64,000 bases of DNA, from assembly GCF_016433145.1 (NCBI RefSeq), contig NC_058132.1:616636219-616700218 (forward strand), in the 5' to 3' direction. This document shows positions 11,590 to 33,605 of this stretch, one piece after another; the stretch's first letter is position 1, and each line of letters begins with the position of its first letter. Position numbers and translations under genes: made by a program. The notes below the pieces were generated by a model. That model saw only the letters and a program-made list of their open reading frames with translations. It had not been told where the DNA came from and searched no databases. The DNA is from Gracilinanus agilis. Lineage: Eukaryota.

Positions 11590-11684
11590 CTGGGGATGGA
11601 TAAGGGAGAGGGAGATGGTCAGAGAATATAAACAAGAATACCAGGTGAGACATGATTAATAAGAGATGAGGAAGACAAGGACAG

Positions 11685-13172: not shown

Positions 13173-13297
13173 CTGAAGAAGAGGGAAGGGTAATAAATTC
13201 CAGGTGGAGCTAAAATAGAGGGATGACTGGGGAGGAGGGTAAGGGATCCTGAAGGAGAGAGGAGAGAGGCAAGGAGCTTCTTCAAGTTGCATTGTTC

Positions 13298-13555: not shown

Positions 13556-13597
13556 GTAATATATATAATAAATGAAAAAAAAGTGTATAGCTCCAGT

Positions 13598-13780
13598 GGC
13601 AGCTAGGGGGCTCAGTGGATAGAGTGCCAGGCCTAGAGTTGGGACAACCTGGATTCAAATCTGGTCTTAGACACTTGTTAGCTGTGTGACTCAGGGCAGG
13701 CCACTTAACCCTGTTTGCCTAATCCTTTCCTTTCTGCCTTAGAGTTGTTCCTGAGACAGAAAATATGGGTTAAAATAAAA
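13598..13780 (+). mobile_element. Marsupial SINE (variant 3' end)
   Basis: ggcagctagg...tcagtggatagagtgccaggcc...ccctgtttgcctaatcc. Confidence 0.75.
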
Positions 13781-14081
13781 AAAATGGATTGCTTCTTATA
13801 AGGTCATTCTGGTAGAAAGAACAATGATCAGGGAGTCAGGAGTTCTCAGTTCTAGTCCTGGCTATGCCACCTAAATTTCCTGAGCTTAGACATTCTCAGT
13901 TTCCTCTCCTGTAAAATGAGAACTCTGGGTGAGATGGTCTCTAAGGAATAGCTAAAGGCTATGATTCTAGGTTGAAGTAGGAGCAACAAAAGGGTTAGAA
14001 AGTGAAAGAGAGCCTTGGGGCTGAGTAGGGAAGACAAGAGGTGGTTTCGCCCATCAGCCCCTAGGTGGTTAAGAGTCACAC

Positions 14082-14351
14082 CTCGGACATGGAGCCTGGC
14101 AGTGGACTCGGAACCCTTGGTCTGGGCGGTCACGTTGCCTGAGTCACTTATCTGGCAGCACCGAAGGGTCAGGCTGTGGTTTGGGCCATTCTGGCTTGTT
14201 TCTATCCGGTTGCAGGGGGTAATTGCAGTCCCATTTAGAAGCCAGGTGAGCTCAGCATCTGGTGGGAAGACCTCACACCGGAATGTGGCATCATCCCCCT
14301 CCTGGATGGTCAGTGGAGTCAGTTCTAAAACTAGCTTCGCCTGGGGGATTT
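14082..14351 (-). CDS. OBSL1: OBSL1 exon 14 (Ig)
   Basis: 270 bp; EIPQAKLVLELTPLTIQEGDDATFRCEV...STARLHVR; weak donor G|GTGTGA; only partly in the ORF track. Confidence 0.92.
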
Positions 14352-14895
14352 CTGCAGGGAGAACAGGGACCCTTAGTGGGACCGAGGTAGGAACATTCCC
14401 TCCTCTGCCCTACATCCATCCTCAGCCCAAATATATCCCAGGGAAGCATGCCTTCTCTCTTTCTTATCACCCTTCTCCCAGATCCTCCATTCTTCCCCCT
14501 TGTCTTGCCCTCCCCCGAAGTGCAGGCTGGAGTTGTTGCATCTTTCCCCTCCTTCCCAATTCTGGCCCCTATTTCTTCTTTCTTTGCTCACCACTTCCTA
14601 TTCTGTGGTCTTTGTTTTTTTGTTTTTTTGTTTTTTTTTAAATATCAAGTATAAATCACTTCCTAGCAAAATCTTGTGATAGCTTTCCCCGCTTTATTTT
14701 ATTTTAATGAGCTGCAGATGGGGGAAGAGCGCGGACTGAGAAGGGACCCAGGAAGGGAAGGAAAGCGGAAGGGAAAGAATAGGATACCCGGGATTAGGAG
14801 AGCCAGTGGGGTGGGGCGGGGCAGTGCGGGGCGAGGTGGGGGGCGTTCAGAGAGCACTGTAGGGGTCTGGGGTGTATGTGGGGAAGACTCTTTAC

Positions 14896-15171
14896 CTTCC
14901 ACAGAGACGAGGAAGATGCGACTGTCCTGGGAGGCATCACAGAGGTACTCGCCGGCATCCCCGCTGCGTGCCCCCCGCACCCGAAGCACCCGCCGTGACC
15001 CGGCCTCCTCCAGCCGCACCCGCCCCCGGCTGGCCAGCCGCTCCCCGTCTTTGTACCAGCGCACGGCCCCCCCAGGCCCCGAAAGACACACAGCCAGCTC
15101 CAGGTCCCTGCCTGGGGCGCATCGAACCCCAGTCCGGGATGCCTCCGGCGACAACACTTTCACGGGAGGCT
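14896..15171 (-). CDS. OBSL1: OBSL1 exon 13 (Ig)
   Basis: 276 bp; EPPVKVLSPEASRTG...YLCDASQDSRIFLVSVE. Confidence 0.95.
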
Positions 15172-15434
15172 CTGTAGGGCCAGAGCCCAGGGCATCACGA
15201 GGAAGGCAGGGAAAGGGGTGGTGGAGAGGACAAGGCCAGGCGGGAGGGAAGTGGGACAAAGGTTTGGGGTCGGAGCTTTGAGCAGAGTCGATGGTGTGCA
15301 TGGACGTGTATGTTTGTGTATGAGGGACGAGCTGACCCCCGAGTTCTGGGGTCGGAGGATGCCCATCCCCAGGGGCCTCTGCTCCCCCTCCCCCTGCTTA
15401 GCCCACTCCCCCTAGTCTGCCCTCCTCTACTCAC

Positions 15435-15722
15435 CAGTCACCTGGACAGGGAAAGTGAGGGTAGGGGCTGCGGGCTCAGACCCAGCCTGGCACGTGTAAT
15501 TCCCGGCATGAGAAGGGTGGGCAGCCCGGATGAGCAGCATGCGCCGAGGGCCCTCAGACCGAAGCTCCAGGTTCCCGTCCTCGACCACTGGGCTCCCATT
15601 CAGGCTCCAGAACACTGGCGCGCTCGCCCTGGACAGCTCACAGCTTAGAATGAAATGCTCGCCAGGGGACACAGACAGCGGGGTGGGAGCCGCCTCCGGG
15701 AGGAGGAATTGCACTGGAGACT
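15435..15722 (-). CDS. OBSL1: OBSL1 exon 12 (Ig)
   Basis: 288 bp; ESPVQFLLPEAAPTP...TLTFPVQVT. Confidence 0.95.
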
Positions 15723-15808
15723 CTGTTGGGGTGGGAGAGTTAGGATTGAAGAAAATGTTGGGGCGCTCCCCCTTCTTCCTTTCTCCCCTTCCTGAGCAGA
15801 GCACTGAC

Positions 15809-16084
15809 CAGCTAGGCGGAGGTCAAAAGTGACTGCCTCATCTCGGGTCTCACAGACATACTCTCCAGCGTCCTGGGGCCTGGCCTGAGGCAGGGTCAGG
15901 GTCCGGATTGGGCCCTCAGCCCCCAGTTTCAAATCTTCTGATGCCTCCACCTCCAGCCCGTCCTTGTACCAACACACACGGGCCCCCACAGGGGCCACCT
16001 CACAGCGAAGCTCCACCCGACCTGGAGACCTGAATTGCAGCTGTAGGAAGCGGGCAGCTGGGCGCACAATCCGTTCTGGGGGTA
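15809..16084 (-). CDS. OBSL1: OBSL1 exon 11 (Ig)
   Basis: 276 bp; VPPERIVRPAARFLQLQFRSPGRVELRCEV...AVTFDLRLA. Confidence 0.95.
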
Positions 16085-17277
16085 CTGGTAGGAGGGAGGG
16101 TATGAGGAGGAGGGGCAAGGGCAGGGAGCTTCTGCTTCCCCCCAACTCCCATCAGGCATTGTGGTCCCTACAGACCCTGATCTCCAGCACCTTCAGCTCT
16201 GACCCTCTAATCCATGTGGTTCTCCTCCTTCATTGTCTTGCTCCAGAATGTTGTCTCAGGTCTTTTGTCCAGTTCTCCCTGCTCTCCCCACACCATTTTA
16301 CTTCTGTCCCCTTTTCTTCCCCCACTACCTAATACTCTTGGCTAGTTAGGAGAGGTGATACAATGACTGCAAACTGGGTAGTAGCTTTGGCTTTGCCACT
16401 CTCTAGCTGTGTGACCTTGAACAGGGTTCTTAACTCTCCCGGGTCTCATTTTCTCAGTCTGTCAAATACCGATAATATTTGCACTGCCTGCAGTGGTGTT
16501 CTGGTACAGATTTAACAATCGGCTTTCTGGGAAAAAATGTATGCTTGACAAACAAAAAAACCCCAAACAACTCTTCTGTCTTAGAACTGATACTAAGTTC
16601 TGGTTCCAAGACAGGAGAGTGGTAACAGATGGACAATGGGGGGTCAAGTGACTTCCCCAGGGTCACACATCTAGGAAATGCCCACCTAGCTGCCCCTCCT
16701 GACAAACTTTTAAGTTAATCTACATTGTGAACATTTTCTCCATCACTTTTTTAAAAAAAAGTCTAGATAACCAATAAAACAACAAATCAAGCCTCGACTT
16801 GTAGGATTTGCTGATTTCCAAGGGGGTTTATACTGAAAATTAAACCACCAGCTCCCTAGATAAAGCTAGCTTTGGTACCTCCCTGATTACCTGCCTCATA
16901 GGACTGTTGTAAAGCTCAAATGAGGTCATGTATACACAGTGCTTTGGGAGCATAAAGCACCAAATTAACAAGTGGGCATATTTGATTTGATTCTGTAAGT
17001 GACTTCTCTGGAACATTTCATTGAATGGTAGGATCATAAATTTAGAGTTGGAAGAGACCCTCAGAGGTCAATCTGGTCCAACTCCATCATTTCACAGATG
17101 AGGAAAACTGAGGCCCACTTAACCAAGATTTGTAAAATAAGGAAGACTCTCTTCTAGCTTTAAACAGCTGATCCTGTTGGATAAGAAGGTTGGAGAACCT
17201 GCCCAAAGTCACAAAGATAGCCAGTGCCAGAATCAGGGTCTGGCTCCAGACTCAGTCCTCCTTCCATCCTGCTGGTC

Positions 17278-17415
17278 CTGGGTTCAGATTTGACCTCAGA
17301 TACTTCCTAGCTATGTAACCCTGGTTAAGTCACTTATGACCAACTGCCCAGCCCTTACCACTTTTGTGCCTTGAAACTAATATACAGTATTGATTCTAAG
17401 ATGGAAGAGAAGAGT
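17278..17415 (+). mobile_element. Marsupial SINE
   Basis: Shared core and tail. Confidence 0.75.
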
Positions 17416-17599
17416 TGTGTTTTTTTTGGGGGGGGGGGATAAAATACTTCATAAACCTTAAATGCTATAGAAATTCTAGTTATTATTTTACTGTTATTGT
17501 GTGGGGAAATTTTATTAGAAGGATATTATGATATGATTTCTGGGTTATGTAACTTTAATATTCTGGCTTTTAAATTTAGATTTTAAAAATTATTATTAT

Positions 17600-17735
17600 T
17601 TAAAATCCTTGCTTTCTAAGACAGAAAAGCAAAGGCTAGGCAAACAGGGTTAAGTGACTTGCCCAAGGTCACACAAGAAGTATCTGAATTCACATATGAA
17701 ACTGGGTCCTCCTGACTCCAGACCTGATGCTCTAT
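17600..17735 (-). mobile_element. Marsupial SINE
   Basis: Reverse-orientation core. Confidence 0.7.
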
Positions 17736-19022
17736 TGAGAGAATTTATTCCTAAAATATTGAATGATTTCTACATCTGGGTTTTGAATTAGAGACTCAAA
17801 GCAGTTCTTTGATCTTTATACTCTTTCCTTTGTCTTTAGGAATTCCAAGGAATGTCCTACTCTAAAGCTTGGTATATAGAAAGGGGAGATTATAGGCTCA
17901 TCCGATCCTAATTTAGACTAGGAGCCACAGCCAATGGCATAACACTCAATATGTATCTGTCCACCATTACCCAGCATATGGACAAGGGTTGAGAATTTTG
18001 ATGGATCTCCTCCCTCTTGGCTATTCACCATTTAGAAATGCTTTGTGTGTCTAGGAGAGAGCCAAAGGGTGAGCTCCCAAAATGTGTCCTTGGACCCGCT
18101 TGAGGGGACTTCCTGGTTTTGATCACCAATCAATTAATTTATTGGTTATTGCTAGCCTAATCAATAAATTGATTTTCTAACCCAGAACTCAGTCTCTTGG
18201 AAGTTTTAATTGCCATATTGTTAATATAGAGACTGTCAACTCTATGAGGGCAGGTGTTGAGTCTTGTCTTTCTACCTCCAGCACTGCCTAGAATAGTGCT
18301 TTGTATTTGCGAGGTACTAAGTTAAACTGATTTATATTCTTCCCAAGTTGGTTACATTTTTACTTGTTTCTCTTAATTTCTAGCCAGAATTCTTTGGATA
18401 AAACAAATTCTGGTTCCATGTGGGCTAAGGGAATGCAAAAGGGGCAAGAGGTGGGGGTGACACTCCCATTGGGGTGCTTTGGAGCTATCAGTGAGTCAAG
18501 GTTGAATATTGAGTGAAGTAAAACTAGGAGTTTTATTGAGGAGGAAACATGTGTAGAGAAAATTGGGCCCAAATAAGCAGCAGGTGGGTCTGGAGCTGGG
18601 TGGCTAGGGACCCCCTTTCCCTGCCTAGCATGCTAAGTCTGAACTGGGGCTCTGAGAAGAGTCTGGCTTCTTCAGGGGGGAAGGTGGGACAGGTGGCTCT
18701 TTTGGGGGCTCTGTCCTATAGATCTCTCTCTTTCCACCCTGGTTACCTCTGAATGCTCCAGAAGTGAGTCTTAGCAAGGAAAATCTCCCAGAAGGTCATC
18801 TGGGGCTTAGCTGTGAAAGCTCCTTTCCTTCTCACCTGGGCAGCTTTACAAATGGCGGCAAAGGCAAGATGAGCCTAAGGAAGAGACTCCTCTACACCTG
18901 AGTTTAGGGTGTTGCTGAGGAAGGCAGAGGGTGGTAAGGAAGAGAAAGTCCCCTGGAACCTTGCAGGCATCTCCCTCCCTCGCTGGGGCTACTCTGAGCC
19001 TTAGCTCTGCCAGACCCCTGAC

Positions 19023-19295
19023 CTGTGACACCAACGATGAAGAAGGCTGAGTCATCCCCTGCGTCGCACACAAACTCCCCTCCATCCTGGGGCTGGGCTG
19101 CAGGTAACACCAGGCGGTGATAGGGGCCCTCGCTCTCCAGAACCAGGCCCTCGTTCTCCTCTACCTCCAGCCCATCCTTGTACCAGCGCACGGGGGCTCC
19201 GGCCCGAGACAGCTCACACGTCAGAACCACCCGCTCCGAGCTCACGGCAGCCACAGACACCTCATCCTGGGGGAACAGGATTTTCACCGGAGGCT
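19023..19295 (-). CDS. OBSL1: OBSL1 exon 10 (273-bp Ig repeat, copy A)
   Basis: ctgcag|AG CCT CCG; EPPVKILFPQDEVSV...SAFFIVGVT; G|GTCAGG donor. Confidence 0.93.
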
Positions 19296-19589
19296 CTGCA
19301 GAGGGGAGAAGCATAGCCATATCTGGAAACAAAATCTGGAATCATAGTCGTGCAAACACTCTGGAAACAATCCCAGAATGGAGGCATCTCAGAGGACCCT
19401 CAAGCAGTCATCTAGCCCACCCAGGCTGTGAGCTGGAATCCCTGGCTTAGCATATCCTCACAGTTGTTTACCTCCACTTGAAGGCCTTGAATGACAAGTC
19501 TTCATGGAGCTCTCTCTACGCCCATCCCTGGAGCCTAACTGTCACCCAAATCAGCCCATTCCACAGTTCTAAGAGGTAAACTTTTCTTT

Positions 19590-19795
19590 TCTTTAAAAAC
19601 AACAACAACAACCCTTAATTTCCATCTTAGGATCAATACTTTGTATTGGTCCCAAGGCAGAAGAGTGGTAAGGGCTAGGCAATGGGGGTGAAGTGACTTG
19701 ATCAAACAGTTAGGAAGTATCTGAGGTCAGACTTGAACCCAGGACCTCGCATCTCTAGGTCTGACTCTCAATCCACTGAGTCACCTACCAGCCCC
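19590..19795 (-). mobile_element. Marsupial SINE
   Basis: Near full-length reverse copy. Confidence 0.8.
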
Positions 19796-19839
19796 CGGTA
19801 GGATTTTCTTGGAACACTAGAAAGCAACTCAAGACAGTG

Positions 19840-20170
19840 AAGGTATCATGCAAAGATGAGTTGAAGGAATTGGGGTGTTAAGCTGGAAGACTCAGGGGCA
19901 CGTGAGTACCATGAGTACAATCTGGGCCACCCTGTGGAGGCAAGACATTCTGTGTGGACCCAGAGGCTAGAACTTGGAGCAATGGGTGGAGACTGTAGAA
20001 AGGTAGTTTGAGTTGCTTCGCAGATCTGTCTAAGGAGGATAATTCTGCCTTGGAAGGTAGCGTGTTCTCTCTTGTTTGAGGATCTCCAGGCAAAGGCTGG
20101 GTGCCCTCGTGAAGAGATTCTCATACAGATATAGCCACCGAGGCTGATCAGCTCTCGAGATCCTGTGAGC
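19840..20170 (+). mobile_element. L3/CR1-like 3' fragment
   Basis: agaacttggagcaatgggtggag...aggctgg...gagatcctgtga resembles the CR1/L3 3' end; family call from recall. Confidence 0.55.
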
Positions 20171-20860
20171 TAGTGTGTTTTTCCCCAAGTCTCTTTCTCT
20201 CTGAATTATCTCTAAATTCTCCCTAGTTTCTCCAGCTGATCTTGGTATGGCATTAAGGGGGAGCACTTTCCTCAATTTCCTTCCCCTCCAGCCCCCCAAA
20301 ACTCTCAGCCAGCCTTTCCAGCTACAGGTATGCAAAGATCCTGCTCATCACCGACAGGCTGGTCTCATCCAGCCACACCAACCCATCCTCACCAGCTGAT
20401 CTCCCCTAGTGCTCCCATAGAAGGGCTGGTGTCCCACGAGGTGGGGTGTGCAGTGGGGAAAATGTAGGATTTGGAAATTCTGTGTAAAAACTGAACCTAA
20501 GGTCCAGCCCCTCGATTTCCTAACGATGTGACTTTGGGCATCACGTCATCTCTGACTTTATAGGTCCCCATCTGTAAAATGAGGGTCGGGGCAAGAGGGT
20601 TGAACTAAATGGAGGTCATATTGTCTTCCAGCTCTAAATCTATTGCCAAGATCCCCTAGTTACCTTCTCCCCGCTTCAGCTGGTCCCCTCACCTTGGCTG
20701 TTGTGTTTAGGTCCTAGGGAATTTCCCGAGTGCTGAGCAAGCACCTTCTTGCCCAGAAGTGTCCCATTCCCCCTATTATTCTGAGAGCAGGGGAAATGGA
20801 AAGCTTTAGGTGGTTAGGGCTCCCTCCATTCTCTGCATCCAGCCCTGCCTGGTCCCTGAC

Positions 20861-21133
20861 CTGTGATGGTGACATTGAAGAAGGCTGAGTCTTCTCCTGC
20901 TTTGCACACAAACTTCCCACCATCTTGGGGCTGGGCTGCAGGCAGTATCAAGCGGTGATGGGGTCCCTCACTCTCCAGGATGAGGGCTCTACTCTCTTCC
21001 ACCTCCAGTCCATCTTTGTACCAGCGCACAGGGACTCCAGCCCGGGACAGCTCACATTTCAGGACCACTGCTTCTGAGCTGAGGGAAGCCAAGGACACTG
21101 TGTTCTGGGGGGATAGAATTCTCACCGGAGGAT
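20861..21133 (-). CDS. OBSL1: OBSL1 exon 9 (273-bp Ig repeat, copy B)
   Basis: DPPVRILSPQNTVSL...SAFFNVTIT; open frame, canonical splice sites. Confidence 0.92.
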
Positions 21134-22430
21134 CTGCAGTGGGGGAGATGCAGCCACTCAGAATCACCCACAGTTGACTTACATGCCAACAGATCAAAAT
21201 CTTGTTTGCTATCCGGGAACTGAGTTGGCCAAGGATCCAGCTAGGGCTGTGTTGGTGAACCTATGGTACATGTGCTGGAGGGGGCTGCTCTCTTCCCCCT
21301 CTCTACCATGCCTGAGGATATTTTTTGGCATCATCCACCCCTCTGCCCAGCAGCCCAATGGGAGTGCTTCTTCCCTCCCATGTCTGGGGAAAGAGGGTGG
21401 CTCACCTTTGGGTGTGAGGGTGCAGTTTGCTCACTCAGTCTCTAAAAGGTAACTATCATTGCACTAGGGCATCCCCTGTTCAAAAGCTTTGTGACATTTG
21501 TCTCAGAAACAGTGACCAAGAGAACCTGAACCCATAGTCTGCCCCCATGAAGAAGATTAGACTCTCCAAGCTAGAAGGGTCCCAAGATGTATTCTATTCC
21601 AATCATACCTGAACCACCTTCACAACATCCCTAAAAGAGGTCTTCTAGCCTGTACACGGAGACCCACATTCTTCAGGAACTCAGTATAGTACCTCCTGAG
21701 TCAGCCCATTTAGGGTCAGGTCTAATTGTTAGGGAGTCAAGTTAATGAGCCCACAAGGGTTTATTAAGCACTCACTATGTTCTGGGCACTGAGCTAAGTG
21801 ATAGGGGTACAAATATAAGCAATAAGATGTTCCCTGCCCTCAAAGAGATTATATTCTAATGCAGGAGAAGAACATAAAACAAGAGTTGAAAAGCAGGGAG
21901 GAATGAAGGATGACTGGCCTGACTCTTTCCTCAAATTGGAGAGTTTTACCTTTTATGGAACATCCCTGAAAACTGGACACTGAATAGGGAGGAACCCACA
22001 AAGAGTTACTCATTGGCAGAAAGGAGGCCAGAATGGATTTAGAGATTACCCATCCGCAGAGCTCTGGCTTGCCAGCTCTCCCAGATTTACCAAGCCTCTC
22101 CAGATTGCCGCAAGACTCTTGGCTCCCAGAAAGAGTTACTTTGTGCAAACCCTGCTGTATCCCCTCCCAGCCCTCTAGGGCTGGGATGTCTTGAGAACTG
22201 TACCTCCCCCAGACTCTCTAGCGTGATGGAGAAGGGCTGACCACCTCAGGTCCACCCCCTGCCCATCTACACCCACCCCCAATATTCTCCCACACAGGGC
22301 AACGACAGCAACTCCTGCCAATTGGAGTAAAGCTAGATAGAAAATATATTTGAGTTCCATTTCAAGAACTGAGTCTTGGGACTCATTTTCCAAGAATTCC
22401 CTTATTCTGCTGCCTACTGGGCCACCTGAC

Positions 22431-22703
22431 CTGTTACAGTTAGAGTGAAGAAGGCAGAGTCGTCTCTGGTGCTGCAGACAAACTCGCCCCCATCCTGGAG
22501 CCTTACAGAAGGCAGCACGAGACGGTGTTGGAGCCCCTCGCTCTCGAGTACCAAATATTTGCTCTCTTCCACCTCCATTCCATTCTTGTACCAGCCCACC
22601 GAGGCTCTGGGCTGGGACACTTGGCAAGTGAGGACGACTCTCTCTGACGTCACAGCAGTCAGGAACATCTCATCTTGGGGTTGTACGATCCGTACTGGGG
22701 GCT
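22431..22703 (-). CDS. OBSL1: OBSL1 exon 8 (273-bp Ig repeat, copy C)
   Basis: EPPVRIVQPQDEMFL...SAFFTLTVT; open frame, canonical splice sites. Confidence 0.92.
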
Positions 22704-22807
22704 CTGAAGAGGGGGATATGATGTCACAATCAGGGGGCTTGTGAAATTCAAAAGAAATTGAGCAGTTTACAAACCTTGAAGTTGTCATGCCAGTTTTCAT
22801 TATCACT

Positions 22808-22860
22808 ATCATCATCATCATCATCATCATCATCATTATTATTATTATTATTATTGTTGT
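22808..22860. repeat. Compound microsatellite (ATC)n(ATT)n(GTT)n
   Basis: Read directly. Confidence 0.95.
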
Positions 22861-23029
22861 TGTCTTGAGTCATGGAGCCCCTCCAGTTTGGGGATGACAA
22901 TTCCCTGAGTTTTCTGCTACACTCCCACTGAGCTTAAGCAATGTTTATAAAGCACCAATCGAGGGGTAAGCAGGTAAATGTTTAACAACTGGGCTCTCTA
23001 GGGAAAAATTATGCACAGTTTCTTTTTGA

Positions 23030-23220
23030 GCCCATACTTTCCACCTTAGAATCAATACTGTGTATTGGTTCCACAGCAGAAGAATAGTAAGGGCTGGGCA
23101 ATGGGCTTAAGTGACTTGCCTGAGGTCACCCAGCTAGGAAGTCTCTGAGACCAGATTTGAAGCCAACACCTCTTGTCTCTAGGCCTGACTCTCAATCCCC
23201 TGATCTACCTATGTGCCCCC
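23030..23220 (-). mobile_element. Marsupial SINE
   Basis: Near full-length reverse copy. Confidence 0.8.
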
Positions 23221-23369
23221 TCAGCCTCCTTTTGAAGAAGACCACTAGAACCTACTAGCTTTTGAGGCAGCCCATTCCACTACTGAATGGTTCTAAAGTC
23301 AGAAAAGTTTGGGTTTTTGGTGTGTTTTTTTTTTTTTTTAAATACTGCAATGCAATTCAAAATGGTGAA

Positions 23370-23736
23370 GTTTATGTCATGCAAAGATGGGCTGAAGATG
23401 GTGGAAAAGTTCAGGCAGGAGAACAGAAGACTCAGGTAGTACATGAAAGCCCTCTTCCAATATCTGATGAGATATTAAATGGAAAAGGGATTAGATTTGT
23501 TCTATTTGGATCCAGAGGGCAGAACTTGGAACAATGGGTGGAGGTTGTAGAAGGGCAGATTTTGTTTGCCTAATAGGACCGAGGACGGCACATTCTGCCC
23601 TGGGAGATAGTAGGCTCTCCCTTGTTCAAGGTCTCCAGACAAAGGCTGGGTGACCTCTTGATAGGGACACTGTAGATACAGTTATGGGCTAGTCTAAATA
23701 GCTGCTGAATCATCCAACTTTCGAGATCCTATGAGC
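23370..23736 (+). mobile_element. L3/CR1-like 3' fragment, paralogous to 19840-20170
   Basis: cagaacttggaacaatgggtggagg...aaggctgggtgacc...tcgagatcctatgagc. Confidence 0.55.
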
Positions 23737-24139
23737 CATCAAACTTCTCTCTAGTCTCCTTCCCTCTAAATCCAACACCCCCAATTCCTTTAGCTGACCC
23801 TGGTATGGCCCAGGTGCATTGTGACCATTCACCTGGAGCCTCATCCAGCTTTCCCAGCTGCTCTCACGCCACCCCCTCTCCCCACACATCCCCATTCGTC
23901 ATGGACAGGCTGGACTAACACAAGACAAATCAGCCCCATTAGCACCATCTGCTTGCCCAATTCATGCTGAAGTGATGAATCTCTCCTCTACTTTAGTGAC
24001 TGGGGGACACGCTTAGATGCCAAAGACTCTCGTGACTCCTGGGCAACCTTTTCCCCAGAAGACTCCCCCATCTCTCTATTACCCAGACAGGGCCTCGGCT
24101 GAACAGCTCCCACCGTACTTTTCATCTTTTTGTGCCCAC

Positions 24140-24412
24140 CTGTGATGGTGACATGGAAGACTGCCTGGTCTTCTCCTGCCTTGCACACAAACTTGCCCCC
24201 ATCCTGGGGCTGGGCTGCAGGCAGGATCAGATGGCAGTGGGGCCCTTTGCTCTCCAGGAGCAGGGTTTCACTCTCCTTTACCACCATTCCGTCCCTGGAC
24301 CAGTGCACGGGGGCTCCAGCCTGGGACAGCTCACAGCTTAAAACCACACGTTCGGAGCTCTCCGCAGTCACAGATACCTCGTCCTGGGGGAATAGGATCT
24401 TCACAGGGGGCT
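24140..24412 (-). CDS. OBSL1: OBSL1 exon 7 (273-bp Ig repeat, copy D)
   Basis: EPPVKILFPQDEVSV...QAVFHVTIT; open frame, canonical splice sites. Confidence 0.9.
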
Positions 24413-25854
24413 CTGCAGTGGGAGACGGTAACATTTTTGAGATATATCATCACCCAAAGACTCAGGGTTAGAGAATGTCATATTCTTTTTTTTTTAAATC
24501 CTTCCCTTCCCAAGTCCACTTGTCTAGCCCTTATGGCTCTTCTGCCTTGGACCAGATACTTGTATGGATTCTGAGACAGAAGGTGAGGTTTTAAAGGATT
24601 GAGGAGGGGGCCAGTTGGTGAAGGTCTTTAAAGAGTTTAAAAGGTCTTAGAAACAACTCTAAGATAGAAGGGGAAGGGCTAGGCAAACAGGGTCACACAG
24701 CTAGGAAGAGTCTGAGGCCAGATGAGAATGCCACATTCATGGTCACAAACACAATCATCTGTGGACGGAGCCCTGGACTTCAGAATGCTCCTATGACCAA
24801 GGTAGAGTACTACCTGTCCTCCGAAGGACCTGGGGCACGGTCGAGGAGGGAAGCTAAGATTACAGACTGGTCTGAAGCTCCTGTGAAATGGGGAGATACC
24901 TACCAGTAAAAGACCCCTGATATTGTGTAAACCTGACTGTTTGCTTGGAAACTGAGGGCTATTATCATGGCACCCTGGCTGGGAAGCCACGGGGCCATTA
25001 TTTAAGAGATTGATCTAAGACTAAATGCAAAGCTGCAATTCTGGACCAAGGGTAACATCTGTTGGGATGTGGCCCCCCACTAGCCAGGCAAGCCGGTACT
25101 GCATCAAATGTGGAATGCAAAGATTTCGCTTCTAATTTTAAAAAATAAATAAAATGCTAATTGTCCTCTTCCCCTTTCCTCACTTTTCCTGAGGTCTGAG
25201 ATTGTTCTCTGCAGGTAATTCCTGTCCTCAGTGTCCTTCAGTAGATTTTCAGCTTTCTCTCACTTTGGCCTCCTTATAAAGCCCAAGTCCAAGAAAGTTA
25301 ACTAGGAGCAAAGCAATTTGGACTTCCTCAAGGTGAGATTTAGTGATGAGTCATGTCAGAACCAAGCCCCAAATATGATGCAGTGGGGATTCCTATATGT
25401 TTTATGGAGAGACATCATCCATGTGAGATGTGGTCCTTCTGGCCATTTCCTTTACAGATGGAAGCAACAAGGAGTGACTTAATGACCTTAATTAGGAGCC
25501 TTCTTGGGTTCCAGTGCCTCCTCCTGCACCCCATCATAGTTGGTCAATGGGGTCACTTCAGAGAACCAATAAGTTAGATAAAAAATGCAGGATTTAGGAG
25601 CTGGAGGCCAAGCCAAAGCTCAGGTCTGAACCAGAGGAGAAAAGGCTTTTGTAGAGAAGATGGACACCACAAAAACAAACACGATGGGGAAGGTAATGGA
25701 TTTGTTTATGTGCCCAGAGAGAGGAGACCCTAGAATGAGTTGTGCCACAGAAATTTCACAGATGGAATTAGATAACAGGACATAATAACTCCATGTGAGA
25801 GTTATGCTTATCTTCATTGTATCTTTCTATATCATAAGTCCATTGGTTTGTGGT

Positions 25855-26030
25855 AGCTAGATGGCCAAGTGGTTAGAGACCCAGGTCCAGAGACAGGAGG
25901 TCCTGCGTAAATCTGGTTTCAGATGCTTTCTAGTTGGGCACAATTCTAATTACCTAGTCCTTACTGCTCTTCTACCTTGGAACCAATATTTGTATTGATG
26001 CTAGGATAGAAGGTAAGGGTTTAAAAAGAA
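25855..26030 (+). mobile_element. Marsupial SINE
   Basis: Shared core and tail. Confidence 0.75.
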
Positions 26031-26444
26031 GAGGTAGGAAGAGGCTAGATCCTGAAGGATTTAAAGATCAAAATGAATTTATATTTGATTTTAGAGTTTA
26101 TTGAATAGGTATGTGTGACTTGGTTAGGTCTACCCTTAGCAAAAATCAGTTTGGCAGCTAGGTGGAAGGTGGTTTGCAGGGGGCAGAGCCTTGGGGCAGG
26201 GAGGTCAGTCTAGGAGGCAACTGCAATAGTCCATACAAAAGGGGATGAGGCGATAGGCTGGGTGAGTGGAGAGAAGGTGATGTATATGATGGAAACCGTG
26301 AAGGGAGAAATGAACAGAACAGACTAGATATAGAGGGTAAGTGTGATTGGAGAATGGAGATGCTCTCAAGAGTAAAAGAGGTCCTGTGAAGAATGGAAGA
26401 TTGGGAACATGCAAAGTTATGAATAGATAAAAGAAAAATCCTTA

Positions 26445-26628
26445 CTTTCTGTTTTAGAATCAATACTGCATTTTGGTTCCAAGGCAGAAGAGCGCTAAGG
26501 GCTAGGCAATGGGGGATTCAGTGACTTGCCCAGGGTCACACAGCTAGGAAGTATCTGGGGCCATATTTGAACCCAGGACTTGCTGTTCTAGGCTTGACAC
26601 TCTATCTCCTGAGTCACCTAGCTGCCCT
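26445..26628 (-). mobile_element. Marsupial SINE
   Basis: Near full-length reverse copy. Confidence 0.8.
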
Positions 26629-27106
26629 GATGGATAGATATTTATTTTTTTTTAATGCTGCAGTTGGCTTATTGGATGTTGAACTTTCCATGGGATGTTC
26701 AAAGAAAGACGGGACGACTACCACCCATCAGGTAGACTGTAAAGGGCTCACCTGCCTGGGAGATAACTTCTAAGGTCTCTTCTGCTTCGATGGTTTCAAG
26801 ATTCTTTGTGATAGCACAGAATGGTGAGACGGTCCTAAGTGGTTTGTCTCCCAATTGGGCAGTTCCTCCTCCTTCACTGTCTGGCCCTGGCTCCCTGTTT
26901 TCTGAATCATCGGGCAAGCTTCCAGCAGAGAGACAAGGGTGGGTGGTGAGGAAGGAAGGGGGCAGAGGAGAAGCTGACGGCATGGACCTTCCAGAGGGAG
27001 CCCCTCTACCAAGCGAGCTGAGGTGTTGCTCCTACTTTAGCTAGCCCTGGGGCCCCGAGACTCCGTTCTCTGGCTCAGAACATCTAAGCTCAATCAGGCT
27101 TCTCAC

Positions 27107-27379
27107 CTTGGATGGTGACCATAAAGAAAGCTGAGTCCTCTCCAGCCTTACACACAAACTCGCCCCCGTGCTGGGGTTGGGCAGCTGGTATCACCAGGCG
27201 GCACCGGAGGCCCTCATTCTCTAGCACCAGGGCTTGGCTCTCTTCTATCTCCAGCCCATCTTTGTACCAATGCACAGGAGCTCCAGCCCGGGACAGCTCA
27301 CATACGAGCACCACCTGTTCCAAGCTCATGGCCTCGATGGATACCTTTTCTTGAGGGAGCACAATCCTCACGGGGGCCT
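27107..27379 (-). CDS. OBSL1: OBSL1 exon 6 (273-bp Ig repeat, copy E)
   Basis: EAPVRIVLPQEKVSI...SAFFMVTIQ; open frame, canonical splice sites. Confidence 0.92.
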
Positions 27380-27832
27380 CTATAGAGGAAAGGCACACAT
27401 ACCCACACACAGATGCAAACACTTATAGTGGCAGTCAGAGGCAGCAGAGCTAGACCACCCGATAGGCACCCCAGGCATGGATGGACCTAGGGGGCTCCCC
27501 AGGCATGGATGGACCTAGGGGGCTCCCTAAGGATGGATAGGAAAATAGTCAGGGTCACCATGGAAACACAGGTTTCAGACTTTCTTCTCACATTGTACCC
27601 TGTCTATCATGGGTCGCCATGGGAATGCATTTCCTATCCACATCACTCCAATGACTTGTTCTTTTTGCTTGGGGATCCCAATGAGTCATTTTTATGTACC
27701 ATTATACCAAATATAACTGTATAAAAAGGTTACCTTTCTATAATAAGCCTACATAATAGATAATTGTCTAGACCACAGATGCCAGACTTGCACCACATGT
27801 GCAAAACTTCCAAGTGCAGTCCAAACCAGAGT

Positions 27833-27935
27833 GACCCTGGGCAAGTCACTTAACCCCCGCTGCCTAGCCCTTACTGCTCTTCTGCCTTAGAACTAATATA
27901 TAGTATTGATTCTAAGATGGAAGGTAAAGGTTTAA
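27833..27935 (+). mobile_element. Marsupial SINE, 3' half
   Basis: gtgaccctgggcaagtcacttaacccc...tattgattctaagatggaagg. Confidence 0.75.
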
Positions 27936-30331
27936 AATATATTTGGGAAATGTTGAACAAAATAAGTAAAAATAAAGTAAAATATAGATTATTTTTAACT
28001 TATGGTTTTCAAAATCTGTGTAGGGCCAGTCAAGATCCCCTTCTAATTGAGCTTGACCCCACTGGTCTAGATAACTCTCTTAAGTTCTGATATAAAGTTG
28101 AATGGGCAGTCCATTGAGCAGGTCCTCATTACTATATCCATCTTGTTCAGGCACTACAGAAGGATAGGGAGCTGGGCCAACTGAATGGGGCAAACAGAGT
28201 GGGCTAGCTTTGGGGAAACTGAACAGCATTTTCAACAACTCCCAAGGTTCTGCCCATAACAAAATCTCAGATTTTTAACTCAACATCCTTTTGGTGATGC
28301 CATATGGCAGTGAGTCATGAAATGATTCAATCTCTGAGGAATCAAAAATATGGGTCATGTAAAGGGCTCTAGAGAGGGTGAGGGTATGATGGGCTTCTGT
28401 GGGCTGCAGCACACGGTACCTGCAGTGAACTGTGTGTGCCAGAAGCAGCCAAGAGAAGTATGACGAGAAACGGAGGCAGGAGGGTCATGTAGGAAGAATG
28501 AAAGAGAACCCCTAGACAGCCTCCGATGGTGCCCTTGAGAGCCCTGGATCGTTGGCTGACCCGAGGGAAGGTTCTGGGTATTTTGGGTGGGCCATCCCTT
28601 CTGTCCTATGTAGGATTTATGGGAGGGCACAGACAAAAGTCTCCCACGATGAGAAGATGTGGACGGGTTGTGATCTGTATTATTGGCTCGAGCTCCAACA
28701 TTGATCAGAGAGCTGACCCGTGGAAATATCGAAGGCTGATAACACAGAAAAGCCTTTATAATTAATGAGTTACTGAATTCAGGCACATTGCCAAGGTGAA
28801 AATCATTAGCCTCTACTGGGCTGAGATTTAGAAAGTGATGAAGTCCCTACCCTCTAATAGGGTTGTTGGGGATGGACGGGGAGGGCTTCCCACATCTCTC
28901 TCTCTGCCCAGCGACTTTAAAGTGGTTGGAATAAATGAATCTTTCGGATAATTTGGGCTCCAGACTGACTCCCTTGCTACGTTAGGTTTCCTGGCACAGA
29001 CAGAAGTGCAGAGGAAACAAGGCTTCTATTTGCCCACTCTCTGACTGATAAGAGAGACACCTGGCCCCTTTTGGCTCTTGTTTCTTGTTCTTGCCTCCGT
29101 TCTCTGGGAGGAAAGGGCATCCCAGGCTGAGGAGACCAGGTGGGCTCAAGTTCCACCATAGGCAGAAGGGAGAACAGGGCAGGCTGGAATTAGAACTGGC
29201 CAGAAGACGCCACACCAATAAAGCTCCTTCCTTTTTTAGTCTATGCTGGACATTTACTTGCCAGCACCCTGAAGCTATTGGTTCAGGCCTTGTTCCATGT
29301 CCCAAGGCTATTCTTACTGGCTGTGACCTCGAGTAAGAGCCTTCCTCATTGGTCATTTAAGAGCAAAACCATGGCCCTGCCTCGCTCACAGGGGTGTTGT
29401 GAAGAGACTGCCTTGTAACCCTGAGAGAGCCACTGATGTATCAGTTGTCTCCATCACTGCTCTCTGAACCTAGATGTCGCTTTGCCCCTGCTCGGCTCTC
29501 CTGCAGATAGAGGTTGAGTTTTACAAGAAGTTTTCCATCATTTGGGAGAGAAATAGTGAGAGAAAGCACTGAGTTACAGGGCGTGGACTCTGTGTCCTTC
29601 CTATTCCTCATCTGGCCTAAGGGACCAGCTAAAACTTCCTGCTCAGTCCAGGAGTCTCCCTCTAGGTCCAATCGGTGCCTGAATAAACCCTCAACATGCC
29701 TGTCCTGCCCTGACTGACTTGGCCAGGCAGCTTCTCATACCGCCATTACAATGTCTTTCCCATTGGAGTGGTCTCCATAGCTATGGTGGATAGCGAGCTA
29801 GACTTGGAGTCAGCAGAGCTGGGTTTGCATCCTGAATCAGACACTAACTGTGTGGTTGTGGGCCATTATAGTCCCTTGGAACCTCAATTTTCTCTTCTGT
29901 AAAATGAGGAAGGGGGTACCCCTCTCCCCTCTTACCTAGTTTTTAGGGCTGTTGTGAAGAAAGCGTTTGTGAATTTTAAAGCACAATGTAAATTGTGAGC
30001 TAGTATGATTATGGTTATTTTCCAGGAGCATCGGTTTTGAGCCGGAGGGACTGTAGAGGCTATTTGGTCCAGGCCCTTCATGGGATAGATGTAAAAATTG
30101 AGGTCCAAACAGCATCAGTCCCCTCCTTACTCCTGGCCAAATCACGCAAGTATTGAGTGACAAATGAGATATTAAAATCCAATCCTCTGACTCCAAATTC
30201 AGAGCATACTTCCACTGAACTATGCCTGCCCTACGGTCATGTAGGTCCTCTTACTCTCAAGCTCGTGCCTTTCCCACCACCCCTTGCTGCCTCTTCTAAT
30301 TGCTGAGGGGTCCCTTATGCCCAGTTCCCAC

Positions 30332-30628
30332 CTTGCACATGGAGTGTGGCAGAGATGTGTACACCAGGGCACAGGAAAGTGATGAGGGTCCCGCTGTCCT
30401 GGAGCCTCGTGGCTCGGAGGAGTAGGCTGTGATGGGGGCCATGCTGCTGCACCAGGTATCCTTGGGCTTCATCCCTGGACCCACTCTCTGGACCCTTTGC
30501 CTTGAGTTCTGCCCCATTCAGAAACCAGGTGCCTTGCACCGAGGTGGAGAGTTCAAGGGAGAAGGTAGCATCATCCCCTTCTTGAACACACACATCCTGT
30601 AGTCCTCTTTGCACCTGAACTGCAGGCA
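30332..30628 (-). CDS. OBSL1: OBSL1 exon 5 (Ig)
   Basis: 297 bp; VPAVQVQRGLQDVCVQEGDDATFSLELS...SATLHVQ. Confidence 0.94.
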
Positions 30629-30759
30629 CTGGGAAGGTAAGAAGCCATCATTAGGGGCAGAGAAGGTGGGCAAGGCCCCAAGGTGGGGAGACCACATATG
30701 GAGGGCACAGATTAGGTGCTGACTATTGAAAGGACAGACAAGACTGAGAGAGAACTCAC

Positions 30760-31062
30760 CCAGGTGCACTGAGCCTGGAAAGAGGATGTAGGGGCTCTGG
30801 CCATGCTTGCTGACCACACAGAGTCGGAAGCGATAGTCACCCTCATTTGGCATGCCATCTCCCGGCACCTCCACCACACCTGCTGCTTCTGTAGTAAGGC
30901 ACTGGACCCAGGCATCTGTGCCCACTTCTTGTCGTTCTAGCCGGTAGGTAAAGGCCGTGTCAGGGGCAGGCACTGGGGGTTTCCAACTGAGCAGAGCTGC
31001 ATTGTTGCATCCTGTGCCCAGCTCGACTGAAACTGGGGGTCCTGGAGGAATCTGCTTCATAC
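30760..31062 (-). CDS. OBSL1: OBSL1 exon 4 (fibronectin type III)
   Basis: 303 bp; PPGPP...LLSWKPP...YRLERQE...YRFRLCVVSKHGQS. Confidence 0.95.
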
Positions 31063-31481
31063 CTAATACAAAATGAGTCAGGGTCCAGGGTTCACTCAAT
31101 AATCACTTCATGACCCACCTGCGCTCTTCCTCTGGTTGTAGCCTGGAAGCAGACTCATCCAGCAACCAACCTCTGTCACCTAGCTCTAACTCTCCTAAGT
31201 TGCCAACCTTTACCTTATTCCCTGAGGCTGTGTCTGCCATGTCTCTCCACCCCACCTTTTACTCCATCCTCATTCCCTCAGTCTTCCATACTCTCTTGTC
31301 TTCTGCCCTGTGCCACGATCCCAAGGCATATCCACCTTCTCTGACTGATTGCTTTCCTCCCCTATTCTTTGCCACGTAGCAGGCTGTTCACTCACCCTCT
31401 AACCCTTACCCCATCCAATCTTCTCTTGCCCTCCTCCCGAGTTTTCCTAGACTCTTGCCTCTTGGCCATGCCCATTCTTAC

Positions 31482-31742
31482 ATTTGACCCTCAGCCTGGA
31501 GGAGGTGTGGGAAGAGCCCAGGCTGAAGGTGACCACCCCAGCATCCTGGCGCGTGACCCCCACCAACACCAGAGTGTGTGTATGGTTGGAGCTGGTTTGG
31601 ATTATCCGGGGTGAAGCCGGCAATTCCTGACCATCTCGAGTCCAGTGGCCGAGGGCCTTGGTTCCTCGGACCTCTACCGAAAGCACCGCGTTCTCTCCTT
31701 CCAGCACATCCAGCTTCCTCGGCAGGCGCCTTGCGATGGGCC
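31482..31742 (-). CDS. OBSL1: OBSL1 exon 3 (Ig)
   Basis: 261 bp; GPIARRLPRKLDVLEGENAVL...SSRLRVK. Confidence 0.95.
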
Positions 31743-31861
31743 CTGGGGATAGAGGAGCCGTAATTGTGCAGATGGGGGTTGGCATGGGCAAACGAGCCCA
31801 GGTTCAGCTTCCCTCATCCCCTCCACCCTGAGGTGGCATCCATCGCCCTGGCCTGGCTGAC

Positions 31862-32131
31862 CTTTGACCGCCACGGTGGCTACCGTCCGCACTCGGCCCC
31901 GCATCTCACACAGGTAAATGCCATCGTCGTCAGCCTCTAGGTCATGGATGACAAGGCGCCGCACGACCCCTGCCTCCCCCATCTCGTACTTGGGGCTGGG
32001 CAGCAGCCTCTGGTCCTCGCGGTACCACGTAGTGGCGATGCCCCGGGAGGGCACCTGACATTCTAGCACGGCATCTCCATGTTCTTCCCCCTCCACGTCC
32101 TCGAGGGCCACTGCAAACCGCACTCGGGGCT
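31862..32131 (-). CDS. OBSL1: OBSL1 exon 2 (Ig)
   Basis: 270 bp; EPRVRFAVALEDVEGEEHGDAVLEC...ADDDGIYLCEMRGRVRTVATVAVK. Confidence 0.96.
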
Positions 32132-32482
32132 CTGCAATCCAGGCAGACAGAGACAGTCAGGCACAGCCAGAGGGACACAGGTTCAAGAGATGCCCCTGAG
32201 GGGAGCCCTAGAGTCTTCCCCAAAGACCTGACCGAGCCGCCTTATTTATTACCCAGGACCTGAAAAACGACGTGATGCCGCCCTGTTATACTGTTCTTAG
32301 ATGTTTCTGGCATGACAGTCTGGTCTCCCCAACTAGACTCTACGCTCCTGGAGGGCCTTCCAGGGTGCTTAGCTGGCCCGCAGGGCGGGGGGCCTATGCT
32401 AGGTGCCCAGGGCTCCCCTTGTTTGGCTGGCAGCACTGCCGTCGGGGCTCCGTTCCTATCTCGGCCGTTCCGGCCCCTGTAC

Positions 32483-33605
32483 CTCGGACGTGCAGTTGCA
32501 CGGCGCTGAGAGTGTGTCCCGCGCTGTTGCGTGCTGCACAGACGTACAGCCCGCAGTCGGACGGCTGGCAGTACAGGACCTTCAGCACGAAGCCGCCGTC
32601 GTGGTCCCGGTAGAGCAGACGTCGCCGCCCGGGGCTCAGAGGGTGGCCTTCCCAGTGCCACTCGGTCTCGGGCTCTGGCTTCCCGGTCACGTAGCATCGG
32701 AATTTGGCGTGCTTTCCCTCACTCACCCAGAAGCTCTTAGGGGCGGGGGGGCCCTGACCGTGCCCTGCAGAAGCCCTCCGGCCCTGTCGGGGCGAGCTCA
32801 GAGGGCTCTCTGGAGAGGGCTGGATCTGGAGCAGGGCAGCGGCCACCGTGCGACCGTGCGTGTTGCTTGCGTGGCACACGTAGACGCCCGCGTCGGGCAG
32901 CCGGATGCCCCTGATCCGCAGCTCGTGGCCCCTGTCCCCAGCCAGGCCTCTCGTCAGAGAGAAGTGACCGCTCTCCCAGATGTCCTCCAGGAGCCGCCCA
33001 TCCTTCTCCCAGTGCACCGCTGGCTCTGGCTGCCCCCCGACTTGGCATGCCAGTACTACTTCCTCACCCTGCTGCACCCACTGAGATTGTGGACCTTCTA
33101 AGAATACAGGGGGCCCTTCCAGGGGCTCAAGAGGTAAGCCTGGGGGCCCCTGGGAAAGGGAGGGGGTCTGGGCCGGGTCTGAGGAGAGGAATGTGGAATC
33201 TGTGTCCAGAGGACTCGGGGTCCTGGCTCTGTGAAGGGGACCCTGCAAAGAGATCAGGTCTGGAGACCCCTCTGAGGGGACGGGCTCTGCCTCCGAAGGC
33301 TCTTGTACTGTGAGGGCTGCGGCCGCATAGGCCTCCCCACATGAATTTTGGGCCCGGCACACATAAACGCCAGCATCTGGGGCCCCAACTTCCCTTACCA
33401 AAAGGCTATGTTCAGCCCCCTCTGTCTGAAGACACAGACGGCTAGAAGCCTCCAGCTGTTGCCCATCCTTCTCCCACAGAACCGTGGGTGGAGGGGACCC
33501 TGTCAGGCAGCAGCGCAAAATGGCATCGGTGCCACTCAGCGCCCGAACGGGCCTTGGGAACCGAAGGAAGCGAGGGGCACCCCCGAGAACACCTCTCTCT
33601 TCCAT
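32483..33605 (-). CDS. OBSL1: OBSL1 (obscurin-like 1) exon 1, coding part (Ig1-Ig3)
   Basis: gccATGG start; FLRFPRPVR...WEKDG...YVCRAQN...FWVSEGKHAKFRCYV; 1123 nt, phase 1. Joined 22-exon CDS = 6084 nt, about 2027 aa. Confidence 0.96.

What the first reader, a model, noticed from the sequence alone, without database searches (positions are those of the whole stretch)
19023..27379. OBSL1 carries five identical-length, homogenised Ig exons (human has four, as recalled)
Seen: five 273-bp phase-1/1 exons (27107, 24140, 22431, 20861, 19023), all open with both Ig cysteines. Copies A and B share 68 of 91 residues by hand count, and PAAQPQ.GG.FVC recurs in four copies. Recalled: human exons 6-9 encode four more divergent domains (ESPVHI, DPPVHI, DVSSWI, EPPVRI), and all five here look most like the last. 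Inference: lineage-specific expansion and concerted evolution of a spacer array, as in titin and obscurin, lengthening this M-band/3M-complex scaffold. Symmetric exons allow any combination to be skipped in frame.
Basis: partly seen in the sequence, partly recalled or inferred. Interest (0 to 1): 0.7.

Follow-up and report, generated by a model that had tools for sequence, protein, structure and literature searches.

The report
Marsupial OBSL1 five-exon Ig array
The five equal-length immunoglobulin-domain exons in the OBSL1 scaffold gene are real, but they are old, separately conserved copies shared by all marsupial orders checked (placentals have four), not a recently expanded or homogenised array.

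Summary
Observation confirmed. Five 273-bp, AG/GT, phase 1/1 exons sit on the minus strand at the stated coordinates. Each encodes one I-set Ig domain of OBSL1, which lies between TMEM198 and INHA.

- Placentals do have four such domains, with the recalled motifs.
- Sarcophilus, Dromiciops and Notamacropus carry the same five in the same order, one-to-one with the window's copies. Each position forms its own clade across four marsupial orders.
- The copies are not homogenised: DNA identity is 63-77% and paralog dS is 0.8 to above 1, against 0.44 for window-Sarcophilus orthologs. Introns are unrelated.
- Paralogs within a species are no more alike than paralogs across species.
- All five are under purifying selection (dN/dS 0.08-0.23).

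The copy number varies widely: placentals 4, marsupials 5, birds 5, turtle 6, crocodilians and squamates 8, gar about 12. Sauropsid copies cluster by lineage, some identical, so birth-and-death with homogenisation is a general property of this array on deep timescales.

Whether marsupials gained a copy or placentals lost one is unresolved (all AU tests p>0.15). No RNA evidence could be obtained. Interest is modest.

The parts
9104..33605 (-). OBSL1 gene, from the start codon at 33605 to the last Ig exon
   Evidence: Colinear tblastn of annotated OBSL1 proteins of Sarcophilus, Dromiciops, Notamacropus and Cervus. It is flanked by TMEM198 and INHA, as in the Sarcophilus, Dromiciops and Bos loci.
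30333..30629 (-). Single-copy Ig exon just before the array ('pre' anchor)
   Evidence: Matches one position in every OBSL1 protein tested.
27107..27379 (-). Array exon A: 273 bp, phase 1/1, one I-set Ig domain
   Evidence: Orthologs at 79-94% protein identity at position 1 of the marsupial arrays. Clade support 100/99.
24140..24412 (-). Array exon B: 273 bp, phase 1/1
   Evidence: Position-2 clade across marsupials, support 100/98.
22431..22703 (-). Array exon C: 273 bp, phase 1/1, the most divergent copy
   Evidence: Position-3 clade, support 100/99.
20861..21133 (-). Array exon D: 273 bp, phase 1/1
   Evidence: Position-4 clade, support 96/93.
19023..19295 (-). Array exon E: 273 bp, phase 1/1. 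It is the copy closest to a consensus and closest to the placental fourth domain. It is absent from the Ensembl-derived Vombatus and Monodelphis models.
   Evidence: Position-5 clade, support 93/87. The closest solved structure is an OBSL1 Ig domain, 2lvc_A, E 2e-31.
15810..16076 (-). Single-copy Ig exon just after the array ('post1' anchor)

Best explanation
The stretch is the central tandem Ig array of OBSL1, the M-band and 3M-complex scaffold protein. Each 273-bp exon encodes one complete I-set Ig domain. Because every exon begins and ends in phase 1, exons can be duplicated, deleted or skipped without breaking the reading frame.

Shown:
- The five copies are old paralogs that were already in place before the living marsupial orders diverged.
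- Since then each copy has evolved on its own under purifying selection, with no detectable sequence exchange in the window's lineage.
- The array is a labile module across vertebrates, with 4 to about 12 copies.
- On long timescales it evolves by birth-and-death with lineage-wise homogenisation. This is very strong in turtles, crocodilians and birds and weak or absent in marsupials and placentals.

Inferred: the copies arise by unequal exchange between neighbouring exons. One more domain lengthens the rod-like spacer between the N-terminal and C-terminal partner-binding ends by roughly one Ig domain.

Not resolved: whether marsupials gained the fifth copy or placentals lost it.
For: - Exon anatomy; I-set domains; closest solved structures are OBSL1 Ig domains.
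- Sarcophilus, Dromiciops and Notamacropus proteins align colinearly, one array domain per window exon, at 74-90% identity. Monodelphis matches A-D at 90-97%.
- In Sarcophilus and Dromiciops DNA the five exons are also 273 bp with AG/GT borders.
- Trees: each marsupial position is its own clade (99, 98, 99, 91, 86 SH-aLRT; 100/99, 100/98, 100/99, 96/93, 93/87).
- Orthologous dS between window and Sarcophilus is 0.38-0.55 with dN/dS 0.08-0.23. Paralogous dS is 0.79-3.9. Single-copy exons give dS 0.44 against Sarcophilus and 1.13 against Bos.
- Paralog identity within a species equals paralog identity across species.
- The repeat does not extend beyond about 20 nt into the introns.
- Copy counts: 4, 5, 5, 6, 8, 8 and about 12.
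- Sauropsid copies cluster by lineage and reach 98-100% identity.
Against: - Inclusion of all five exons therefore rests on conservation and on other species' gene models.
- Two Ensembl-derived models (Vombatus, Monodelphis) lack exon E.
- The domain trees rest on 90 columns, and the deep forks are unresolved.
- The dS values rest on 90 codons per exon and are near saturation.
- The structural 'spacer length' role was not tested.
Confidence: 0.85

Rival explanations
1. Marsupial-stem gain. The therian ancestor had four array exons, and one (D or E) arose by tandem duplication after the split from placentals but before the marsupial orders diverged. Some homogenisation of A, B and D may have occurred on that stem.
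For: - D-E is the most similar pair in every marsupial, at 76-87% protein identity.
- dS among B, D and E is about 0.8, below the window-Bos single-copy dS of 1.13.
- A+B(+D) group together with 75-89 support.
- Forcing all marsupial domains into one clade costs only 0.9 lnL (p 0.23). The positional-orthology clades for A, B and E cost 4-5 lnL.
Against: - The D and E clades do not join in the best tree. Forcing D+E costs 5.8 lnL (p 0.27), and forcing D+E+placental d4 costs 10.3 lnL (p 0.16).
- The dS errors on 90 codons overlap the therian value.
- A is as close to Bos d4 (74% DNA identity) as to its own paralogs.
Confidence: 0.45
2. Placental loss. The therian ancestor already had five or more array exons, and placentals deleted one, probably between their third and fourth exons.
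For: - Every non-mammal checked has five or more copies in its longest model.
- Paralog dS of 0.8 to above 1 is about the same as the therian orthologous dS.
- The tree is star-like at the base of the mammalian clade.
- In Bos the intron between array exons 3 and 4 is 5.1 kb and the others are about 0.6-1.1 kb. That intron is where D lies in marsupials.
- A clade of marsupial C with placental d3 costs only 0.6 lnL.
Against: - No relic exon is detectable in that Bos intron.
- Sauropsid arrays have a different make-up, with two divergent-type domains, so their counts are not positionally comparable.
- Echidna shows only three complete copies plus a fragment, in a locus whose gene model is incomplete (1290 aa).
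Confidence: 0.4
3. One reading: recent, lineage-specific expansion with ongoing concerted evolution (gene conversion) that keeps the five copies alike in this genome.
For: - All five copies resemble the last placental domain more than their positional counterparts.
- Marsupial arrays are more self-similar (median 66-69% identity) than placental ones (about 51%).
Against: - DNA identity among copies is 63-77% and dS is at least 0.79.
- Introns are unrelated.
- Each copy has a one-to-one ortholog in three other orders.
- Within-species paralog identity is no higher than cross-species identity for the window.
- No significant shared identical tracts once ten tests are allowed for.
Confidence: 0.04
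4. An assembly duplication created the extra copy.
For: None.
Against: - The closest pair of copies differs at 23% of bases.
- The same five copies, in the same order and with similar spacing, are present in independent assemblies of Sarcophilus (two assemblies) and Dromiciops.
Confidence: 0.01

Closest known systems
Placental OBSL1 central Ig array (four one-domain exons; Papio, Cervus, Bos, Microtus, Echinops checked)
   Same: Same gene, same neighbours, same position between the same flanking single-copy Ig exons, and one Ig domain per phase-1 exon of about 273 bp. Window exon E is 76-79% identical in protein to the fourth placental domain.
   Different: There are five copies, not four. The marsupial copies are more alike (median 66-69% against about 51%). 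Placental domains 1-3 sit on long branches of 0.45-0.9 changes per site. Positional orthology between the two arrays is not resolved.
Sauropsid OBSL1 arrays (birds 5, turtle 6, crocodilians and squamates 8)
   Same: Same array position and the same 89-91-residue unit. The copy number varies, and predicted isoforms with fewer units exist (Chrysemys 2, Numida 3).
   Different: Sauropsid arrays hold two divergent-type domains (the first and the penultimate) that have no mammalian counterpart. Their remaining copies are nearly identical within a lineage (up to 98-100%), which marks recent homogenisation that marsupials lack.
Tandem Ig-exon arrays of obscurin and titin (from general knowledge of these genes)
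   Same: Rod-like strings of I-set Ig domains, one domain per symmetric exon, prone to duplication and differential splicing. Obscurin, titin and MyBP-C domains are the next-best solved-structure matches after OBSL1.
   Different: The OBSL1 array is much shorter. In marsupials it has been stable in number and order since before the living orders diverged. No differential splicing could be shown here.

Membership tests
OBSL1 ortholog | Colinear domain architecture with annotated OBSL1 proteins | tested here: met
   tblastn of the Sarcophilus, Dromiciops, Notamacropus, Monodelphis and Cervus OBSL1 proteins covers the window from 33605 to 9104 in order.
OBSL1 ortholog | Conserved neighbours: INHA upstream head-to-head, TMEM198 downstream | tested here: met
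   The TM7S3/TM198 domain lies at 4837-5481 (+). The INHA-like sequence lies at 34762-36593 (+). The same neighbours flank OBSL1 in the Sarcophilus, Dromiciops and Bos loci.
I-set immunoglobulin domain | Pfam I-set match above the curated cut-off, with the conserved cysteine pair and core tryptophan | tested here: met
   I-set scores are 30.6-36.1 bits against a cut-off of 23.7 for all five exons. The C...W...C pattern is present in all five. The best solved match is OBSL1 Ig domain 2lvc_A, E 2e-31.
Array under concerted evolution (homogenised) | Paralogs within a genome are more alike than the same paralog pair compared across species | tested here: not met
   For the window, within-species DNA identity matches cross-species identity for all ten pairs. 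Only D-E in Dromiciops shows a small excess. The trees group copies by position, not by species.
Array under concerted evolution (homogenised) | Low synonymous divergence between copies, or shared conversion tracts | tested here: not met
   Paralog dS is 0.79-3.9 against orthologous dS of 0.38-0.55. The longest identical runs are not significant after ten tests.
Recent segmental (tandem) duplication | Similarity extends into the flanking introns | tested here: not met
   The repeat family covers 300 nt, that is the exon plus about 14-20 nt on each side. The introns share only interspersed-repeat pieces.
Lineage-specific expansion in marsupials | Marsupial copies form a clade that excludes placental and monotreme copies | tested here: inconclusive
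   Not recovered in the best tree, but not rejected either (delta lnL 0.9, p-AU 0.23). Positional orthology is also not rejected (p 0.16-0.33).
Cassette exons (in-frame alternative skipping) | Symmetric phase, and transcripts with and without the exon | tested here: inconclusive
   Phase 1/1 is confirmed. The Vombatus and Monodelphis models lack E, and the Chrysemys and Numida isoforms have fewer units.

The most novel reading that the evidence does not exclude
The central Ig array of OBSL1 is a hot spot of exon birth-and-death across vertebrates, with 4 to about 12 units and near-identical copies in turtles, crocodilians and birds. On this reading marsupials fixed a fifth unit on their stem lineage. 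That would make their M-band and 3M scaffold one Ig domain longer than the placental one, and the extra unit (E) may be used as an optional cassette.
Probability: 0.4. Interest if true: 0.4.

Novelty: new member of a known kind. Interest (0 to 1): 0.27.

Why it matters
OBSL1 links titin and myomesin at the muscle M-band. It is also one of the three genes of the 3M growth-syndrome complex. A stable difference of one domain between marsupials and placentals, within a 4-to-12 range across vertebrates, shows that the middle of this scaffold tolerates length changes while both ends are conserved. That helps in reading human variants and exon-skipping events in exons 6-9, and it gives a natural series for testing whether spacer length matters. 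The finding does not reveal a new mechanism: tandem Ig-exon arrays that duplicate and homogenise are well known from obscurin and titin.

Tried and rejected
Those 36 bases lie in an intron.
- Third word search, with the Sarcophilus array as query. It was swamped by frogs and fishes with more domains and gave no further marsupials.
- Echidna locus. It holds only three complete array exons and a fragment, under an incomplete 1290-aa gene model, so it cannot settle the direction of change.
- Intron anchors between the window and Bos. There are none in the array region.
- Relic fifth exon. None was found in the Bos intron or in the window's introns.
- AU tests of nine groupings. None was rejected. 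A tenth grouping (A+B+D) was already present in the best tree, and two planned ones were not run.
- The look-up of encoding contigs for the Cervus and Notamacropus isoforms. They are not on record.
- Short ORF fragments P0106, P0108 and P0112, from Logan and ENA contigs of unnamed samples. They look like the last placental array exon and could be host DNA, possibly human. Their contigs were not fetched or pursued.
All window exons were handled one by one, by reference.
- The N run at 35063-35301 was left as it is.
Full report
**What is there**

The window carries five exons on the minus strand at 27107-27379 (A), 24140-24412 (B), 22431-22703 (C), 20861-21133 (D) and 19023-19295 (E).
- Each is exactly 273 bp, preceded by AG and followed by GT. 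Each is open only in the frame that puts a phase-1 intron at both ends.
- Each translates to a 90-residue unit plus a split codon. Each passes Pfam's I-set and Ig_3 thresholds.
- The closest solved structures are NMR structures of OBSL1 Ig domains (2lvc_A E 2e-31, 2e6p_A, 2cpc_A).
- A protein profile of the five finds exactly five strong matches (164-173 bits). The next three Ig exons downstream give weaker matches of 75, 58 and 43 bits.
- A DNA profile finds no decayed extra copy in the introns.

The count '68 of 91 shared residues' fits the pair D/E and not the first two copies listed, which share 55 of 90.

**Which gene**

Annotated OBSL1 proteins of Sarcophilus, Dromiciops, Notamacropus, Monodelphis and Cervus align colinearly from 33605 down to 9104.
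- TMEM198 lies downstream on the other strand, at 4837-5481.
- INHA lies head-to-head upstream, at 34762-36593.
- The same neighbours flank OBSL1 in the Sarcophilus, Dromiciops and Bos loci.
- The window is 90-97% identical in protein to Monodelphis for exons A-D. It therefore comes from a didelphid relative, not from Monodelphis itself.

**Is five special to this genome?**

No. In the Sarcophilus (2016 aa), Dromiciops (2029 aa) and Notamacropus (2031 aa) proteins, five array domains lie between the same two single-copy Ig domains. Each of them best matches its positional counterpart in the window, at 74-90% identity.

In the Sarcophilus and Dromiciops genomic loci the five exons are again 273 bp with AG/GT borders, and their spacing is similar.

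In domain trees each position forms its own clade across the marsupial orders:
- quick tree of 112 domains: SH-aLRT 99, 98, 99, 91, 86;
- careful tree of 61 domains: 100/99, 100/98, 100/99, 96/93, 93/87.

This also excludes an assembly duplication.

Two Ensembl-derived models (Vombatus 1887 aa, Monodelphis 1795 aa) lack exon E. That may be a real skipped form or a model projected from a four-domain placental protein. I could not tell which.

**Is the array homogenised?**

Not in this lineage.

| Measure | Value |
|---|---|
| DNA identity between copies | 63-77% |
| Protein identity between copies | 52-76% |
| Paralogous dS, B/D/E | 0.79-0.86 |
| Paralogous dS, A against B, D, E | 1.0-1.1 |
| Paralogous dS, C against the others | 1.2-3.9 |
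| Orthologous dS, window-Sarcophilus, the same exons | 0.38-0.55 |
| dS over 921 codons of single-copy exons, window-Sarcophilus | 0.44 |
| dS over 921 codons of single-copy exons, window-Bos | 1.13 |

- The repeat reaches only about 14-20 nt into the introns, which otherwise share only interspersed-repeat pieces.
- For every pair of positions, the identity of the two paralogs within the window equals their identity across species. Only D-E in Dromiciops shows a small excess, 0.87 against 0.81-0.83.
- No pair shares identical tracts longer than expected once ten tests are allowed for.
- Orthologous dN/dS of 0.08-0.23 shows that all five are kept by purifying selection.

Taken at face value, the last exchange or duplication among B, D and E is about 1.8 times as old as the marsupial crown divergence. 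A and C are older still. That places them at roughly the age of the marsupial-placental split. Ninety codons near saturation do not allow a firmer date.

**Placentals and other vertebrates**

All five window exons resemble the fourth placental domain most. Protein identity is 60-79%. DNA identity to the fourth Bos exon is 70-80%.

In the tree this arises for two reasons. The fourth placental domain and marsupial E sit on very short branches near the base of the mammalian clade. Placental domains 1-3 sit on long branches of 0.45-0.9.

| Group | Array units |
|---|---|
| Placentals | 4 |
| Marsupials | 5 |
| Birds | 5 |
| Turtle | 6 |
| Crocodilians and squamates | 8 |
| Gar | about 12 |

Predicted shorter isoforms exist in Chrysemys (2 units) and Numida (3 units).

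Sauropsid arrays have a different make-up. Their first and penultimate domains are of a divergent type that forms its own clade. The remaining copies cluster by lineage and are up to 98-100% identical within a species. All mammalian array domains form one clade against them (98; 100/98).

So lineage-wise homogenisation and copy-number change are real properties of this array on deep timescales. There is no common ancestral amniote number with one-to-one orthologs.

**Gain or loss?**

Unresolved. AU tests reject none of the groupings tried.

| Grouping forced into one clade | delta lnL | p-AU |
|---|---|---|
| All marsupial domains | 0.9 | 0.23 |
| All placental domains | 0.2 | 0.48 |
| E + placental d4 | 4.1 | 0.32 |
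| A + d1 | 4.8 | 0.18 |
| B + d2 | 4.4 | 0.26 |
| C + d3 | 0.6 | 0.33 |
| D + E | 5.8 | 0.27 |
| D + E + d4 | 10.3 | 0.16 |

- For a marsupial-stem gain: D-E is the most similar pair in every marsupial, and dS among B, D and E is lower than the therian value.
- For a placental loss: all non-mammals have five or more units, the mammalian tree is star-like, and Bos has an unusually long intron (5.1 kb) exactly where D lies in marsupials.
- No relic exon is detectable in that Bos intron, and no intron anchors survive between the window and Bos.
- The echidna locus has three complete array exons, which cluster with each other, plus a fragment. Its gene model is incomplete (1290 aa), so it does not help.

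**How it most likely works**

Shown: there is one Ig domain per symmetric exon, all five are conserved, and number and order have been stable since before the marsupial orders diverged.

Inferred: new units arise and disappear by unequal exchange between neighbouring, similar exons. Each unit adds one Ig domain to a rod-like spacer. That spacer separates the N-terminal domains, which bind titin M10 and myomesin (PMC12812942, PMC6509138), from the C-terminal part. Any unit can be skipped in frame.

Obsl1 is reported to be extensively spliced in mouse (PMC6509138).

**Limits and rules observed**

Exons were used one by one, by reference.
- The N run at 35063-35301 was not touched.
- Short ORF fragments from unnamed Logan and ENA samples (P0106, P0108, P0112) could be placental host DNA, possibly human. 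They were not followed to their contigs.
- The divergence ages used for scale are general knowledge and were not tested here.
- Full-text searches found no paper on OBSL1 array copy number in marsupials or across vertebrates. That is weak evidence of novelty, because many journals are not covered.

**Verdict**

It is an ordinary member of a known kind (tandem Ig-exon arrays). The 'homogenised' and 'lineage-specific' parts are overstated. The one-domain difference between marsupials and placentals, and the wide range across vertebrates, are modestly interesting.

Noticed in passing
window 14897-15172 (-): This OBSL1 Ig exon (third after the array) has very low synonymous divergence among marsupials: dS 0.11-0.13, against a mean of 0.38-0.44 over the single-copy exons compared. 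Against Bos it is 0.57 where the mean is 1.13. Dromiciops isoform X4 skips this exon and the next one. Synonymous constraint of this kind is typical of a regulated cassette exon.
   Followed up: partly
window 34762-36593 (+), N run 35063-35301: INHA lies head-to-head with OBSL1, and the assembly gap falls inside it. The first 26 residues of the Ensembl Monodelphis OBSL1 model map to 36289-36212 on the minus strand, inside INHA's second exon. They look like a model artefact.
   Followed up: partly
window 33970-34911: Non-coding sequence between OBSL1 and INHA is conserved with Bos (68-76% identity over 190-490 nt) and with Sarcophilus. It is probably the shared bidirectional promoter region.
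   Followed up: no
L001 (echidna) 10001-78410: The echidna OBSL1 gene spans 68 kb but gives a 1290-aa model. It shows three complete array exons plus a fragment, and the profile found none of the Ig exons that follow the array in other mammals. Either the model and assembly are poor or the gene is partly degraded.
   Followed up: partly
Sauropsid OBSL1 proteins P0202, P0192, P0311: Array domains are identical or nearly so within a species (turtle d2 = d4; alligator up to 98%; birds d2/d3 98-99%). This marks recent homogenisation or duplication, far stronger than anything seen in mammals.
   Followed up: partly
window 22790-22836 (-): An ATG/CAT trinucleotide run lies in the intron just upstream of exon C. 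It reads as a poly-Met ORF start.
   Followed up: no
window 19604-19800, 23023-23220, 26431-26630: The array introns each carry copies, 76-82% alike, of the same interspersed repeat (SINE/MIR-like). This is the only similarity between the introns.
   Followed up: no
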